A stretch of DNA of 64,000 nucleotides from Magallana gigas (GCF_963853765.1 NC_088858.1:22630001-22694000); one strand, 5' to 3'. Shown: positions 30,919 to 61,988, counted from the stretch's first letter. A program made the numbers and translations. Notes: generated by a model from the sequence alone, not told the origin.

Positions 30919-32971
30919 TCAATATGACTGTAACCTTTGAAGAGCAGCCATGAGGCTCTGGATAATCTCGTCTATGTCTCCTGACTTGACATTGTTACCT
31001 TAAAGGAAAATATGCATAGAATTATGAAAAGAAAAATATTTAAAGGCGTTTTGAAAATCGGTCGTCTACTCTTTTGAAAATTGTTGCAATTACAAGATTC
31101 TACAAGAGATAGTAACGCTCAATTGGTTGCACTGAACAATAATTCCAGGATTTTATGTTTTGAAATTCAAAGCTTTTATATTGAATTGGTCGATACAAGT
31201 AACATAGCCCTTAAAGGACATAAAATGTTGTGGTTACCGTGGTAATTGTCGTTCTTTCTGTCAGCGTTGAGAGCTTTACTCCAGGACTGTGTGGCCTTCT
31301 CGGAGAAGTCCCCGGAACTAACGCTGTCTGAAAGGAGAGGGAGCTACTGTAGAGTTGTATTAAGTGGTTCAGCACGGCCATAAATAAATGAAGAGACAGC
31401 GTAGATATGTCTTTAAGCAGACGGAATGAGTAAGAATTTAACTAAAATCGAGACAGTACCTTGCCATTTTTGATTGTTTTTATTTGTGCCTACAACTTCG
31501 TTCCACTTTTTATCCGCCCCTACGGCCGCTTTCCAGGAGTCGGTCGCCTTAACGGAGAAGTCTTTTTTATCTCCTGGAAATTAATAATGATCTAAGTTAT
31601 TTTTTTAAACTATGAATGGAAATTTTAAAGACACAGTGTGTAAAAATCAGAGGTAAGTCACCGTACCGTCTGGCCAGCTTCCGTCCCAGGATTTGCCCGA
31701 TACACCAACTCCCTTGCTGTCCATACTGAATCCAAAGTCGCTTCCTCTCCCTGTCGTCTGCTCTTTGTTGTTTTCAACTTCTTTATTTTGACCTGTAAAA
31801 TGCAGTCACAAAATTGTTGCTAATATACTCCTAAAAAACCTGCTATGTTACGGGAACAGAATAATAATCTGCATATTGTATGTTTTATTTTATAAACGAT
31901 GAATAGACCTGGCCAACGTCCGTCCCAGCTATGTCCTCTCGGTGACTCGGTCACCTGGTTCTCTTGAAACGGGACGACTTGGTTTTGTTGAAAGCTTTGC
32001 TCTGCAGGACGTTATCAAATTGTTAAACAATATGCAATGATTTGTTTCAGCATTAAAACATCTCTTTTCCCCCCGAGTTTTTCCATAAAGTTTAATTGAA
32101 ACTTTACAATTATTTTATCTTTTTATAAGAGAAAAAAAGAAGTTATTTTTAGCTTAGAAAAAATGAGGGAGTCAGATCCTGGTTGTCCATAAAAAGAAAA
32201 CCTGAAAACACTCTCAGTTCATTATTGGTAAGATTTGAAACCAGTGCATTTTGAAGCCAACGGTTTTAAGCTCCCCTTCTAGTCTTGAACTGATGCATAT
32301 GAAAAAAGTACCTTTGTTTGAAAAGCTATTCGGATCAAAATCTCTCATAAAATTTCCGTTGTTTGGATCGAATTTTACGTTGCTCATGTCAAAGGTCATC
32401 CGACCACCACCGGAGTAATCTAAATTCTTGACCTTGATATACTCCGGAGCCTTCGTTGTGATGGCTTGGAATCCGATCGAGAATGGTTCCAGATTTTGTT
32501 CTTTCATTGGATTGTAGTTGACGAAGGATATGGCGTTTGGATTGAATTTCGGGATATTGAGATTTTCGTATATTGCAGGATTGTACGTCCTAGGAGGGGG
32601 AGCTGTTAAATTGTTTGGTTTTAAAGGTGTCATTTCAATCAAAACTACACAATCAGCAACAAAATTGTAAGTTGTGGATGCATTTAGTAAGATTTTGATG
32701 AAACAATACGCTATGTACATGTATATTCTATATATAAACCTATTTATACATGCATAACCTTTCAGGGGTTTAACACCGTCTTTTGAAAAAGTTTTCAAAT
32801 TAGTATACTAAAGTACATGTATCCAGAACAAAATAGTTGCATTAGTAAGAGTGAGATAAAAAAAAATGGAATCAGGATGAATGAACATTTCTATCAAATA
32901 TAAAACGCATACTCACCTCCTAAAACTCCATAAGAACATATTCCCAATATTAATATTACCGACATCTTCAT
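30919..32971 (-). CDS. Secreted protein A (~296 aa): FNPN/FDPN region plus Trp-containing repeats
   Basis: Exons 32971-32917 (MKMSVILILGICSYGVLG signal), 32644-32312, 32001-31909, 31792-31667, 31573-31460, 31327-31238, 30998-30919. All introns are phase 1. Ends DIDEIIQSLMAALQRLQSY*. Confidence 0.8.
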
Positions 32972-33763
32972 GAAAAAAAATCTTTGATTGACTGTATTGT
33001 GTTGATACCAGTTTTGTGTTGATTACTACTGTTAAAAATACAAAATACGTCACTTCCGTCCACTGGCGGGGTATCTATCAACTTTAATGATATCTATCAC
33101 CTGCATTTTATCGCTGACCGGAACCAGTGACCGAGGGAAGTATGGCTAAATTCTCACGTGTTGCATGCAGGCCCGATTTCGTTTCCAAAATTATACATAT
33201 AAGTGGTGGTCTTGTTATATTACTGTACATCCACGAAATATTCGTTAAAACACGATAATATTGATATTAATAATCCATGGGCGAGAGGGGGGGGGGGGTG
33301 GGGCGGAACTGGACAAATATTTTTAATGTTTTCATCTTTTTAAGTTGTTCAATACGGTCTAGCACGTAGTCTGTCCTTTATTAATTTTGAAAACCAATCT
33401 TCAAAACCATTTCCCCAAGGTAAGCGCCTAGTTAGATGTGTAATTATGTCGCAGATGAATTATCGATAGGATGCCACGATTTTATCTTGTCCGTGATGGT
33501 TTGTTGGTTTTGGGAGGTTGGTATGGGTATGATTTCTCAAAATTTTCATTTAATGACAGATACAAATAATGACATCAGGTGTTTATTTGTTCACATAATT
33601 GTGTGTGTGTGTGGGGGGGGGGGGTCAATCTGCTAATGTTAATAACCATTTAATAAAAGATCTTTTCTTCACCAGCATTGACGGTGACAAATGAACAAAG
33701 AACTTCGAACCTTTTTAAGATTCACCGAGCTTTTTTAATGATTCTCACACTACATATACAATA

Positions 33764-34777
33764 TCAGTTTTTTGTTGAAAGGGTTTCGAGAACCTTAAGA
33801 AGGGATAAAAACAGGTCCAAATATTTGTTTTCCTACAAACAAAAAATAATTTAAAAGTTACTCGAAGTTCAACTTACATACATGTATAAAGTTACAGGAG
33901 TTTCATTGACTTAAATCGAAACAGTTAAAAGAAATCTTTTTTCTTACCTTCACTCCACCTGCAATTAATTAAAAAAATAAAACCTTATTTGATCGTAGAA
34001 TAAGTACACATGTATCGAATTCAATAAACCGTTTACTTTTAATTATCAGCACACATATGATTAATTAAGCAATATACATTTAATGTATTTGAATTTATTA
34101 ATATAATTCACATGATTACTACGATAGACATTGATTTCGTATTCGATTTTCTTTTTATCAATATTAAAATGCACTTTACCTGTTATTTCTCGTTTTCCTA
34201 CAAATATATACGAATGAATAAATTGAATATAACAGAGAACTTTTATATTAAAATGTATAATTTACATGTATTTCAATTGTATTCTTAAAGCCACTTTTAT
34301 AAGTAAAACTTCGCCCTCGTCCGACCGACTGACTAAAACAAAGTAATCGACTTAAGATGTTTTTGTCAACAATGTGAGCAATTTTTAAAACACTTTTTTT
34401 TTTAAAGGGGGCCTAACTTCAATACATATTGCTGACTCACCCAGCAAAGAGAATTGATTTGACTGGGATCCTGTCAAACCGCCACCTTAAAAACAATCCC
34501 AAAATATATGATCAGTTTCAAAAATATAGCCATTACAATCTCTTTTTTACCTTATTCAAGGAAATCAATTCATGTAAAACATAGACTTCACAAAAATATA
34601 ATTTCCCACCATTTTTAGGACAAGTAAATTTTAATAGAGATTGGAAATATTACCATTCATAAATCCCTTGGGATCCACTAGATTTGAACCTCCAGAAAAC
34701 TTTGAAATGGAACCGCCACCTACCAAACATTGAATAAAAACGGAGAACAATAAAGCCCACACCCAGCCTGCGTCCAT
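33764..34777 (-). CDS. Small secreted protein C (~82 aa) with an 11-nt micro-exon
   Basis: Exons 34777-34654 (MDAGWVWALLFSVFIQCLVG signal...LVDPKGFMNG), 34485-34441, 33958-33948 (GGVK; cag|..|gtaaga), 33832-33764 (ENKYLDLFLSLLKVLETLSTKN*). Confidence 0.6.
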
Positions 34778-60021: not shown

Positions 60022-61134
60022 CTTGTCGAAACAGAACTAGCGGTCTTTCAAAGTCATTAAATGGTGTCCGGCAATCACTAGCCTCCCACTTGTGTAGATT
60101 CTACGATTAATCTTTGACTGTCTCATTATCAATCACCTGTGGAGCGGAAGGTCACGGAGGCGAGGAATTGGTCACAATAGTTTACTATGATAAGTGTGTT
60201 CGTGTGTGTTTCTTGTGTATTGGTCATCCTATCAAATAATTATATAGTACTGTGTTTGAAATATACTTCAATTCTCCCGAAAAACTGCATTAGATTTTCA
60301 CATGACATACAGAAAAAAATACACCCGCATTTTTTATAGATCTATTCATAAAATATATATTTTATGTTATTTAAAAAAATTTAATGAATTAATATGACGA
60401 AGGACTTGTGAGTCACATGTGTAGGTATCCCCAGTTGTGTTGTGATTAGTTACATTTTATACAGTGCGTGTTTGGAAAATTAAGTGGAACATAGTATCTT
60501 CATTTTTTATTTTCATTTTCAGTTGGTTTTATAAGGAAATGGGGAGATGGTTGTAAAAGTATTAACTCTCCTAAAATGATATGCAGGAATACACATGTAC
60601 ATATTTTCAGTATTGATAATTTATTAATATTTTAACGTATTAGATTGTTATATAATATTTTGGTTGACAAACTTTTTAAGCGTATATATGTCATACATTA
60701 GTAGTATAGTAATCATCCAAAATTGTGAAGTGAAAGGAGGGGTAACTCCTTGTTCTTAAACCAAGCAACAAAATAATCAATGATAAGTATTTCAATTTTT
60801 ATATTCAAATAAAATTAGCATTTATTACAATTATTTATACAGCAAAAATAACCCATATGTAAAACAATGATAAACATGATATGAAATAAATTTTAAAATT
60901 TCAACTAAAATATTTGATCAATGATAAAAGATAATGTCTATACCAACAGAATAAGGACAATGTATTCCATGATCTTAAGAAGGTAATATATAGGTTATTG
61001 TTTCTGTCAATTAGTGTTTTGTAAATATAAATCTCCATAGAAAGAATTATTACGCTACAATCATAGCCACCTATACTGTACAATATTTGGCGCTCTGGAT
61101 TTATTCTTAGTCTTCGGGGTAATGAAGGACAGTC

Positions 61135-61988
61135 TTAAATATTATATGTTCTTCTTTTCCTTTTTCCAACTAGAAATGCACCGGGATTTAGAAATTGTGA
61201 GGGTTGGAAAAAATTCGTTGAAAATGAAGTTCCACCAGGCGAAGTGCTTCCGCTTCCGGTCTGTTGCTGAAATTGGTTCCCGCTTTGTTGATTGGTTGTG
61301 ATCCCTCCATTCAAATTCAGGTTTTGAAAATTATTGAAAATTCCCAGAGATAAGAAAAGATTTGGTTTACTCAAGTTCCCAGGTTTTTGGAGTTGGTTAG
61401 TACTGGTAATTCCATTTGCAGTTATAGACGATCCAGAACCCAAATTTGAAAATTGTGAATTTCCAAGATTTAGAACAGGAGAAGGGTCGATTAAGTTTTG
61501 CTGAAAAGACCCGGATGAACCATTGATTCCGGACGAAGCTCCTCCAACCGATGACTGAAAACTCGGATCAATGATCTGCTGAGGCATCGGTGCAGAATTT
61601 CCGGTTCCTCCTCCACCATTTCCGGAATTGAAGAACGAGGAAGAGCTGTCTGTCTGACGAAGAATTCTGAGAATGTCTGGAATAAGAATTTAAAAAGTCA
61701 TATTTCTCTCTTTATCGGGAATATGCACGTGTTTCTTATGAATGTACATTTTAACTTTTACCTACAATGTATATAAAAAAATCCATTAGGTATGTTGTCA
61801 TGATCGTTCACTACTACATTTACATCAAGTCCGAATCGTTTTAGGTCAAGTTTCTAAGACAAATGACCAAATCATTGCGGAAACTAAAAAAAAAAGACAG
61901 GAAACAATATCTCACCCGTTTTTCCAGCAGTGAATGTTAAATTCGTAAGAAGACCGATGAAAACAAACAACTGAAAGAAAGGAATCAT
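61135..61988 (-). CDS. Secreted Ser/Asn/Gln/Gly-rich protein J (~204 aa)
   Basis: Exon 61988-61916 (MIPFFQLFVFIGLLTNLTFTAGKT, phase 1) plus exon 61676-61135 (DILRILR|QTDSSS...FLNPGAFLV-GKRKRR-TYNI*). Confidence 0.85.

What the first reader, a model, noticed from the sequence alone, without database searches (positions are those of the whole stretch)
30919..61988. Cluster of ten unassigned secreted low-complexity protein genes sharing an F-[DN]-P-[NS] motif
Seen: ten compact genes (A, C, B, D, E, F, G, H, I, J) in 31 kb, each with a hydrophobic signal-peptide exon ending in a phase-1 intron. Seven (A, B, D, E, F, G, I) carry repeated F[DN]P[NS] motifs, mostly in Gly/Ser/Met/Asn/Gln spacers; J and C carry only variants (IDPS, LNPG, VDPK). 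I recognise no named family. Inference: this is a locally expanded, co-regulated secretory system for an extracellular biomaterial such as hinge ligament, shell or periostracum matrix, larval cement or mucus. Established analogy only: scallop abductin and Pinctada ligament Met-rich protein are Gly/Met-rich, and shell proteomes are rich in repetitive low-complexity proteins.
Basis: partly seen in the sequence, partly recalled or inferred. Interest (0 to 1): 0.92.

Follow-up and report, generated by a model that had tools for sequence, protein, structure and literature searches.

The report
Ancient bivalve cluster of secreted disordered proteins
A 31-kb stretch of the Pacific oyster genome holds nine neighbouring genes for secreted, floppy, Gly/Ser-rich proteins built around a short F-D/N-P-N motif; the same cluster is found in mussels, scallops, pearl oysters, zebra mussels and river mussels, its products carry hormone-style cutting and capping signals, and nobody seems to have described it.

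Summary

- **Gene count:** there are nine genes, not ten. Each starts with a signal-peptide exon that ends in a phase-1 intron. "C" is the 3' part of B, because RNA contigs splice B's main exon onto C's first exon.
- **Motif:** F[DN]P[NS] occurs 3-9 times in A, B, D, E, F, G and I, against 0.02-0.12 expected from composition.
- **RNA support:** spliced contigs from three studies confirm all five D introns and two B junctions.
- **Assembly gap:** it lies between E and F and breaks no coding sequence.
- **Age:** this is not a local oyster expansion. Order and orientation (F-like, E, D, B) recur in Pinctada, Argopecten, Mytilus, Dreissena and Potamilus. D and E are single-locus in the oyster genome.
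- **D module:** D carries six copies of a 53-residue module. The module has no indels across 20 copies from five species.
- **Maturation signals:** propeptides end in [KR]R before Gln. D's modules are separated by G-[KR]R…[KR]R-Q. C-termini end in Gly followed by zero to three basic residues. This is the signature of convertase cleavage, amidation and pyroglutamate formation.
- **Structure:** AlphaFold predicts disorder, with short helices starting at the motif.

No Pfam family, paper or shell or ligament proteome supplement matched. The tissue of expression remains unknown. My best reading is granule-processed secreted proteins that form an extracellular gel or matrix.

The parts
30919..32971 (-). 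Gene A. Seven exons: 32971-32917, 32644-32312, 32001-31909, 31792-31667, 31573-31460, 31327-31238, 30998-30919. It encodes 290 aa. Exon 2 carries three F[DN]PN motifs. The rest is a Trp-containing repeat region.
   Evidence: The open frame is complete and all sites are GT/AG. The signal exon is phase 1.
36119..37934 (-). Gene B. Exons: 37934-37844 (signal peptide plus propeptide ending RR before Q), 37715-36585, 36330-36295, and 36210-36119 (stop) or 36210-36133 if it is spliced onward.
   Evidence: Intron 37716-37843 and the junction 36585 to 36330 are seen in spliced contigs of X1, X5 and X8. The exon-2 end (GFNPLSPTLG) matches the Pinctada ORF end.
35447..35902 (-). These are either further coding exons of B (long model, 565 aa) or 3' UTR. 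It is not an independent gene.
   Evidence: The contigs extend 601-610 nt beyond the 36585 junction. The long model stays in frame with phase-1 GT/AG sites. I saw no signal exon lying directly upstream of C. Which model is right is unresolved.
39831..42276 (-). Gene D. Six exons: 42276-42210, 42106-41917, 41802-41501, 41414-40986, 40878-40435, 40234-39831. It encodes 611 aa. It is a polyprotein with junctions GRKRRQ, GKR-VIH-KRQ and GRR-SIR-KRQ, and it ends in GRR then stop.
   Evidence: All five introns are confirmed by spliced contigs in three runs. The model has no internal stop.
39834..41693 (-). Six copies of the 53-residue D module (FDPN..LDPS..LG-8 residues-FDPD..FNFFNP) at 39834-40001, 40436-40603, 40646-40804, 40987-41154, 41206-41364 and 41535-41693.
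   Evidence: 20 modules from five species align without indels over columns 1-53, with 15 invariant columns. These are the only copies in the genome.
43475..46587 (-). Gene E. Two exons: 46587-46545 and 46368-43475. It encodes 978 aa with eight strict motifs and many variant motifs.
   Evidence: It is identical to XP_034326064.2. Orthologues occur across Autobranchia. AF2 gives a mean pLDDT of 39.
46936..47084 (.). Assembly gap (N run).
   Evidence: It lies between the divergent 5' ends of E (46587) and F (48411) and touches no coding exon.
48411..50324 (+). Gene F. Three exons: 48411-48462, 48805-48960, 50188-50324. It encodes 114 aa, is Gly/Phe-rich with five motifs, and ends FDPNAF-GKK.
   Evidence: There are F-like neighbours of E in all five other bivalves. 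No RNA evidence here.
51432..52108 (+). Gene G. Two exons: 51432-51477 and 51717-52108. It encodes 145 aa. The propeptide ends KR before Q, there are five motifs, and it ends FDPSTF-GKK.
   Evidence: The Argopecten counterpart ends GKKK. There was one distant hit in the protein search.
52242..53290 (-). Gene H. Two exons: 53290-53245 and 53173-52242. It encodes 325 aa. It is secreted, has no motif and is not low-complexity. It sits inside the cluster, but family membership is doubtful.
   Evidence: No Pfam match passed threshold.
58040..60021 (-). Gene I. Two exons: 60021-59967 and 59631-58040. It encodes 548 aa, with Ser 33%, Gly 21% and Met 8%. It has nine motifs and a 120-bp tandem repeat coding GGSSQMM units. 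It ends NPSQFI-GRKR.
61135..61988 (-). Gene J. Two exons: 61988-61916 and 61676-61135. It encodes 204 aa. The propeptide has RILR before Q, only variant motifs are present (IDPS, LNPG), and it ends GAFLV-GKRKRR.

Best explanation
The locus is an ancient, single-copy battery of nine genes. As far as the named database hits show, it is restricted to bivalves.

At least seven of the genes (A, B, D, E, F, G, I), and probably J, encode secreted, Cys-free, intrinsically disordered proteins. These proteins are built from one short unit, F-[DN]-P-[NDS]-x-hydrophobic-N, followed by about six residues. The unit starts a short helix and is set in Gly/Ser/Thr/Asn/Gln/Met spacers.

After signal-peptide removal the proteins are matured like prohormones in a regulated secretory pathway:
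- A convertase cuts after [KR]R (or RxxR), which exposes an N-terminal Gln that can cyclise to pyroglutamate.
- D is further cut into three products of about 127-141 residues plus a longer first one.
- Basic residues are trimmed, and the conserved C-terminal Gly is converted to an amide.

The capped, protease-resistant products are then released from an exocrine epithelium. There the conserved aromatic/helical motifs act as 'stickers' between flexible spacers and build a hydrated extracellular gel or elastic matrix.

Shown here: the gene structures, splicing of B and D, motif enrichment, deep conservation and microsynteny, conservation of the processing sites, and predicted disorder. Inferred: the actual cleavage, amidation and pyroglutamate formation, the self-assembly, the material formed and the tissue. 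A digestive-tract or mantle epithelium is my guess, the former suggested only by GATA-site enrichment.
For: GENE MODELS AND RNA
- Six splice junctions are confirmed in three studies, at contig depths of roughly 10 to 700.
- E is identical to the RefSeq model.

SECRETION
- There are nine phase-1 signal exons.

MOTIF
- Observed 3-9 per protein against 0.02-0.12 expected.
- AF2 places short helices directly after the [DN]P of the motifs in E. It predicts E (pLDDT 39) and the D module (pLDDT 59) as otherwise disordered.

CONSERVATION
- The E profile finds only bivalve proteins among the named hits: oysters, Pinctada, Argopecten, Mytilus, Potamilus and Dreissena.
- Those loci carry F-like, D-like and B-like neighbours in the same order and orientation.
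- D modules align without indels, with 68% mean column identity.

PROCESSING SIGNATURE
- [KR]R-Q[ST] occurs at the start of B, D, G, I and J and at every D module boundary in five species.
- C-termini are G, GK, GKK, GKKK, GRR or GKR across species. The Gly is constant while the number of basic residues varies from 0 to 3, which fits amidation rather than a basic anchor.

EXPRESSION PATTERN
- Expression is not ubiquitous. B and D are both present in X1, X5 and X8, and there are no reads among 12.9 million records of poly-A run X19.

PROMOTERS
- WGATAR sites: 13 in the nine 150-bp upstream stretches against 4.2 expected.
- In other bivalves: 15 in 14 stretches against 6.4 expected.
Against: - No tissue or proteomic evidence was obtainable, so the material is a guess.
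- Products of 127-141 residues with pyroGlu and amide caps could equally be signals rather than building blocks.
- The fixed length of the Gly linker in the D module suggests a specific bound conformation, which is more than a generic sticker-spacer model needs.
- The self-association test gave no answer.
- The GATA enrichment was noticed post hoc and is modest.
- Run kinds X1-X14 are only guessed to be RNA, although intron-less contigs argue for it.
- H lacks the motif, and J has only variants.
Confidence: 0.45

Rival explanations
1. The genes are precursors of bioactive peptides (hormone-, pheromone- or neuropeptide-like). On this reading D is a true polyprotein. It releases several copies of a large amidated, pyroglutamylated ligand that binds a receptor. 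F, G, I and J give further amidated products.
For: - The architecture is that of a prohormone: signal peptide, repeated units flanked by dibasic sites with short spacer peptides (VIH, SIR), Gly before the basic pair, and Gln after it.
- These sites are conserved in five species.
- The D module has no indels and 15 invariant positions although it is predicted unfolded, which is typical of a ligand that folds on binding.
- The gene is single-copy.
Against: - The products are 127-141 residues long and 60-70% Ser/Gly/Thr/Asn/Gln, far from known neuropeptides.
- B, E and I are 450-980 residues long with few internal dibasic sites.
- Contig depths of hundreds are high for neuropeptide genes in bulk tissue.
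- The supplements of a scallop ganglion neuropeptide survey hold no such sequences.
Confidence: 0.2
2. The cluster encodes matrix proteins of a mantle-secreted hard or elastic structure: hinge ligament, periostracum, shell, or larval cement or byssus.
For: - The family appears restricted to bivalves and is present in all autobranch lineages sampled. That fits a bivalve-defining structure such as the ligament.
- I and B+C hold 6-8% Met with abundant Gly.
- F and its orthologues are Gly/Phe-rich with GGFG-type repeats.
- N-terminal pyroglutamate is known in the ligament peptide LICP and in Prismalin-14 (PMC13080008).
Against: - FDPN- and FNPN-type strings are absent from the supplements of the Pinctada insoluble shell/ligament study, which reports LMP and a second ligament protein among its top hits. 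The only match was a single unrelated FDPS.
- FDPN-type strings are also absent from the supplements of Mytilus and Pinctada shell proteomes. These texts are partial, and tryptic proteomics would miss these K/R-poor proteins.
- There are no abductin-type or shematrin-type features.
- The proteins are Ser-rich and near neutral, not acidic.
- Shell matrix proteins usually evolve fast and lineage-specifically, unlike this locus.
Confidence: 0.2
3. The genes encode mucosal or humoral defence peptides. This would be analogous to the clustered, Gly-rich, convertase-processed NLP/CNC peptides of the nematode epidermis, which GATA factors drive.
For: - F and G are small and Gly-rich with probable amidated ends, and they are clustered.
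- GATA-site enrichment is seen upstream.
- Expression is strongly sample-dependent.
Against: - After trimming the products are neutral to acidic, not cationic or amphipathic.
- There is deep sequence conservation and single-copy status, where immune effectors usually show rapid turnover.
- The large members (B, D, E, I) do not fit.
Confidence: 0.1

Closest known systems
Prohormone / neuropeptide polyprotein precursors (convertase, carboxypeptidase, PAM and glutaminyl-cyclase maturation)
   Same: Both have a signal peptide, repeated units bounded by dibasic sites with short spacer peptides, Gly before the basic residues (amide donor) and Gln after them (pyroGlu). All of these are conserved across species.
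   Different: The units here are 127-141 residues (core module 53 residues) and mostly Ser/Gly-rich disordered sequence. Several members are 450-980 residues long with cleavage signals only at the ends. Neuronal expression has not been shown.
Vertebrate SCPP gene cluster (enamel matrix proteins, caseins, salivary proteins)
   Same: Both are tandem clusters of genes for secreted, intrinsically disordered proteins that share exon structure and a short conserved motif, serving extracellular materials.
   Different: There is no homology. The motif here is F-[DN]-P-N rather than SxE phosphorylation sites. The signal exon here ends in phase 1. The cluster is confined to bivalves. Calcium binding is not indicated.
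Scallop abductin and Pinctada ligament Met-rich protein LMP
   Same: All are secreted Gly- and Met-containing low-complexity proteins of bivalves. F-type members have GGFG-like repeats.
   Different: No FGGMGGGNAG-type repeats are present. The supplement of the LMP study holds no FDPN or FNPN strings. Here Ser is the dominant residue.
FG-repeat domains of nucleoporins (cohesive sticker-spacer hydrogels)
   Same: Phe-centred short motifs are spaced by uncharged Ser/Thr/Gly/Asn/Gln linkers in Cys-free disordered chains. This is a plausible physical analogy for gel formation.
   Different: Nucleoporin FG domains are intracellular, unrelated in sequence, and neither secreted nor processed. The analogy was not tested here.
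C. elegans NLP/CNC clusters of Gly-rich secreted peptides
   Same: Both are clustered small Gly-rich secreted peptides with basic processing sites and GATA-type regulation.
   Different: The nematode peptides are immune-induced and fast-evolving. The bivalve cluster is deeply conserved and includes very large members.

Membership tests
Neuropeptide / prohormone precursor | N-terminal signal peptide | tested here: met
   Hydrophobic first exons are present in all nine genes. No SignalP run was available.
Neuropeptide / prohormone precursor | Repeated peptide units flanked by mono- or dibasic cleavage sites, with Gly as amide donor | tested here: met
   D has GRKRRQ, GKR-VIH-KRQ, GRR-SIR-KRQ and a GRR-stop end. 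These are conserved in five species. The terminal Gly is constant with 0-3 basic residues after it.
Neuropeptide / prohormone precursor | Short mature peptides (about 3-40 residues) | tested here: not met
   The predicted D products are 127-141 residues. B, E and I are 450-980 residues.
Neuropeptide / prohormone precursor | Expression in neurons or endocrine cells, with detection of the mature peptide | not testable with these tools
   Run identities are coded. The only indirect check found no such sequences in the scallop ganglion survey supplements.
Abductin | Tandem Gly/Met/Phe decapeptide repeats (FGGMGGGNAG type; definition from my own knowledge) | tested here: not met
   There are no GGMGGG or FGGMG strings in any model.
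Pinctada ligament Met-rich protein (LMP) and related insoluble Met-rich shell proteins | Sequence similarity to the published proteins | tested here: not met
   There are no FDPN, FNPN or FNPS strings in the 64 kb of supplementary sequence text of PMC7591529. This was a string test only, not an alignment.
Shematrin family | Gly-rich protein with C-terminal RKKKY/RRKKY/RRRKY (definition from my own knowledge) | tested here: not met
   No model ends in [RK]3-4 followed by Y.
Gel-forming mucins | Cys-rich vWD/CK domains flanking Pro/Thr/Ser tandem repeats | tested here: not met
   No Pfam domain was found. The mature proteins contain no Cys.
Any Pfam family | Match at the gathering threshold | tested here: not met
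   Eight main exons were scanned. Nothing had an E-value below 0.008, and every match was below its cut-off.

The most novel reading that the evidence does not exclude
The cluster would be the genetic toolkit of one bivalve-defining extracellular material, for example the reversible gel of the crystalline style or the elastic ligament. It would have been kept intact since the Cambrian-Ordovician split of autobranch bivalves. Its core component, D, would deliver multiple copies of a previously unknown 53-residue, fixed-length module whose released products carry pyroglutamate and amide caps. That module would act as the specific cross-linker or ligand organising the other FDPN-motif proteins. 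This would be a new class of large amidated peptides used as building material rather than as hormones.
Probability: 0.3. Interest if true: 0.8.

Novelty: new variant of a known kind. Interest (0 to 1): 0.62.

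Why it matters
Bivalves are defined by a few extracellular inventions: the ligament, the style, filter-feeding mucus and the byssus. The protein basis of these is mostly unknown or lineage-specific.

A gene cluster that has kept its order, its motif, a 53-residue module without indels and its processing sites across lineages that separated roughly half a billion years ago (a date from general knowledge) is a strong candidate for one of these core functions. 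It gives a concrete handle of nine genes and one motif for expression, proteomic and knock-down work in the Pacific oyster.

It would also extend prohormone-type maturation (convertase, amidation, pyroglutamate) to large disordered proteins. It offers a natural sticker-spacer polymer family for biomaterials research.

Tried and rejected
PROTEIN AND FEATURE SEARCHES
- A word-indexed protein search with B's main exon found nothing, because it was swamped by low-complexity candidates.
- The same search with G found a single unnamed hit.
- The ESM Atlas feature search with a D exon gave no usable hit.

FALSE LEAD: FEMALE GONAD GENE
[quoted passage not shown] Its qPCR primers have no match in the window at up to 3 mismatches.

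TISSUE OF EXPRESSION
- I tried to infer tissue from the Logan contigs of E orthologues. Those contigs are collinear with the genome, intron included, so they come from DNA runs and say nothing about expression.
- Searches for run accession numbers in papers gave nothing useful.

LITERATURE
- Searches for accession numbers, locus tags and motif strings found no papers.
- A shipworm crystalline-style proteome lists mucin, tubulin and collagen but gives no sequences that could be compared.

PROMOTERS
- A search for shared 7- to 9-mers in the nine upstream regions found nothing above random windows. Only the GATA core stood out afterwards.

SELF-ASSOCIATION
- The D module was folded as a pair. The result was 'no answer': score 0.00, controls not run, and the alignment not used. 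This is neither support nor evidence against.

OTHER
- A fold search was not attempted, because both models are low-confidence.
- Rfam found no family in the window.
- Earlier findings of this scan returned nothing relevant.

Full report
WHAT IS THERE

A six-frame scan finds 44 F[DN]P[NS] tetrapeptides in the 64-kb window, and 42 of them lie between 32.3 and 59.6 kb. They sit in long open frames rich in Gly, Ser, Asn, Gln and Met. I built splice models from the sequence and obtained nine genes:
- A: 32971-30919, minus strand, 7 exons, 290 aa.
- B: 37934-36119, minus strand, possibly continuing to about 35447.
- D: 42276-39831, minus strand, 6 exons, 611 aa.
- E: 46587-43475, minus strand, 978 aa.
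- F: 48411-50324, plus strand, 114 aa.
- G: 51432-52108, plus strand, 145 aa.
- H: 53290-52242, minus strand, 325 aa.
- I: 60021-58040, minus strand, 548 aa.
- J: 61988-61135, minus strand, 204 aa.

Every first exon begins with a hydrophobic signal-like peptide, and its length is 1 mod 3, so it ends in a phase-1 GT donor. Outside the signal peptides the proteins contain no cysteine.

IS IT MORE THAN CHANCE

Composition-preserving shuffles of each protein give 0.02-0.12 strict motifs on average and never more than two in 2000 shuffles. The observed counts are 3 (A), 4 (B), 7 (D), 8 (E), 5 (F), 5 (G) and 9 (I). H and J have none, and J has only variants. Fifty-two instances give the extended consensus [GS][SG]-F-[DN]-P-[ND]-x-[LVMI]-N.

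TRANSCRIPTS

One 5.9-kb stretch covering B and D was laid on four runs. Contigs from three runs of three different studies skip exactly the predicted introns. These are B 37716-37843, and D 42107-42209, 41803-41916, 41415-41500, 40879-40985 and 40235-40434. All have GT..AG ends on the minus strand.

The contigs that cover B's main exon continue for about 600 nt with sequence that matches the exon at 36330-36295. I could not resolve whether the two further C exons are coding (long model, in frame, 565 aa) or 3' UTR.

Contig depths ranged from about 10 to several hundred, with D above B in all three runs. A poly-A RNA run of the same species label gave no read on either gene among 12.9 million records. 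Expression is therefore strong but not ubiquitous. The run kinds are only guesses of the tool, but intron-less contigs argue for RNA.

THE GAP

The N run at 46936-47084 lies between the divergent 5' ends of E (ATG 46587, minus strand) and F (ATG 48411, plus strand). No coding exon touches it. I did not fill it.

WHOSE GENOME

My E model is residue-for-residue identical to XP_034326064.2 of Magallana gigas. The window's contig has the same length as the record carrying that protein. RefSeq calls it 'uncharacterized protein DDB_G0283357-like'. Orthologues elsewhere carry equally spurious low-complexity names.

CONSERVATION

E has orthologues in other oysters at 46-94% identity. A profile of these orthologues, searched against 1.8 billion representative proteins, finds 27 proteins. 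All of the named ones are bivalves: Pinctada imbricata, Argopecten irradians, Mytilus coruscus, Potamilus streckersoni and Dreissena polymorpha.

I fetched 10 kb on each side of these genes and scanned the open frames.
- In all five species an F-type Gly/Phe-rich FDPN gene lies upstream of E on the opposite strand.
- In four species a D-type multi-module gene lies downstream on the same strand.
- A B-type gene follows in Pinctada, and its exon ends in the same GFNPLSP-LG as oyster B. A B-type gene is also present in Dreissena.

This is the order and orientation seen in the oyster. The cluster therefore predates the split of Pteriomorphia and Heteroconchia, roughly half a billion years ago by general knowledge.

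Within the oyster genome, the D modules and E occur only here. The stretches sampled beside the window hold no further members. So 'local expansion' is the wrong description.

THE D MODULE

Twenty modules from five species align over 53 columns without a single indel. Mean column identity is 68% and 15 columns are invariant. Each module is two motif units, FDPNxVN…LDPS and FDPDQFN…FNFFNP, joined by LG plus an eight-residue Gly-rich linker of constant length. The Ser/Gly spacers between modules vary freely in length.

AlphaFold2 with this alignment gives pLDDT 59 and only one short helix. E with 23 homologues gives pLDDT 39, with short helices that begin right after the [DN]P of motifs and a small N-terminal helical piece. 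These are disordered proteins with a conserved linear motif that caps short helices.

PROCESSING SIGNATURE

- Behind the signal peptide there is a short propeptide ending in a basic site followed by Gln-Ser/Thr: B …ARR|QT, D …RVR|QT, G …IKR|QS, I …ALR|QS, J …RILR|QT.
- D's exons are joined by GRKRR|Q, GKR-VIH-KR|Q and GRR-SIR-KR|Q, and D ends in GRR-stop.
- The same [KR]R|Q[ST] starts and G[KR]R ends bound the modules in Pinctada, Argopecten, Mytilus and Dreissena.
- The C-termini of the small members read …FDPNAF-GKK, …FDPSTF-GKK, …FGGKK, …FVGK, …PLGKKK, …NSFG and …NSFSG in different species.

The Gly is constant while the number of basic residues behind it ranges from none to three. That is what amidation by peptidylglycine amidating monooxygenase after carboxypeptidase trimming predicts. 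A simple basic tail would not predict it.

From established knowledge of the regulated secretory pathway, I infer convertase cleavage, N-terminal pyroglutamate and C-terminal amide. None of this was measured.

REGULATION

A blind search for shared 7- to 9-mers upstream of the nine ATGs found nothing above random windows, but GATA cores were frequent in the list. When tested afterwards, WGATAR occurs 13 times in the nine 150-bp upstream stretches, with at least one in each, against 4.2 expected (P about 0.001). On 14 annotated starts of the orthologous genes in the five other bivalves it occurs 15 times against 6.4 expected (P about 0.007). This is modest evidence, and partly post hoc, for a common GATA-type input. 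It does not identify the tissue.

WHAT IT IS NOT

- No Pfam family matches.
- No paper in the library contains the motif strings, the accession numbers or the locus tags.
- There are no abductin-type or shematrin-type features.
- No FDPN or FNPN strings occur in the supplementary sequences of the Pinctada insoluble shell/ligament study. No FDPN-type strings occur in two shell proteomes or in a scallop neuropeptide survey.
- A female-gonad gene with the same automatic name is a different locus.
- Database contigs of E orthologues turned out to be genomic, not transcript, so they give no tissue information.

INTERPRETATION

The best-supported reading is a conserved battery of secreted disordered proteins. 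They mature like prohormones and are then used outside the cell, most likely as a hydrated gel or elastic matrix held together by the Phe-centred helical motifs.

Confidence in the descriptive part is high. Confidence in the mechanism is about 0.45, because neither the tissue nor the material is known.

The pairing test of the D module gave no answer and is not evidence either way.

VERDICT

- The family appears undescribed.
- I rate it a new variant of a known kind: a tandem cluster of secreted disordered proteins, here combined with prohormone-type maturation and unusual depth of conservation. Interest is 0.62.

Noticed in passing
window 42658-43117: A perfect 228-bp tandem duplication (2.0 copies, 100% identical) lies about 400-800 bp upstream of D's start codon. 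It looks like a very recent duplication in the D-E intergenic region.
   Followed up: no
window 55363-55736 and 57314-57736: Two arrays of a 21-bp minisatellite (about 18.5 copies each) lie in inverted orientation. They form arms of about 330 nt that are 94% complementary, with 1.7 kb between them, and they sit between genes H and I. They may be the ends of a mobile element or a hairpin-prone structure.
   Followed up: partly
window 38650-38689: A 40-nt piece between B and D is matched by reads and contigs of X5, X8 and the poly-A run X19. These all continue on both sides into sequence unlike the window. It is probably a fragment of a repeat or of a gene transcribed elsewhere.
   Followed up: no
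window 58160-58601: The coding sequence of gene I contains a 120-bp (40-codon) tandem repeat, 3 copies at 92% identity. It encodes GGSSGGSSSGGSSQMM-type units. The length of this Met-rich block is likely to be polymorphic.
   Followed up: no
window 40435-41414: D exons 4 and 5 are near-identical double-module exons (94% identical at protein level, both phase 1-1). The same double-module exon design is seen in Pinctada and Mytilus. This suggests either an old exon design kept similar by gene conversion or a repeated duplication.
   Followed up: partly
L009 (Dreissena polymorpha locus): Dreissena has two adjacent E-type genes (LOC127871355 and LOC127871356) in one 90% cluster. In Dreissena the B-like gene precedes the D-like modules, which is a local rearrangement of the otherwise conserved order.
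   Followed up: no
window 27800-30100: Arg/Glu- and Arg/Ser-rich open frames lie on the plus strand just upstream of the cluster.
   Followed up: partly
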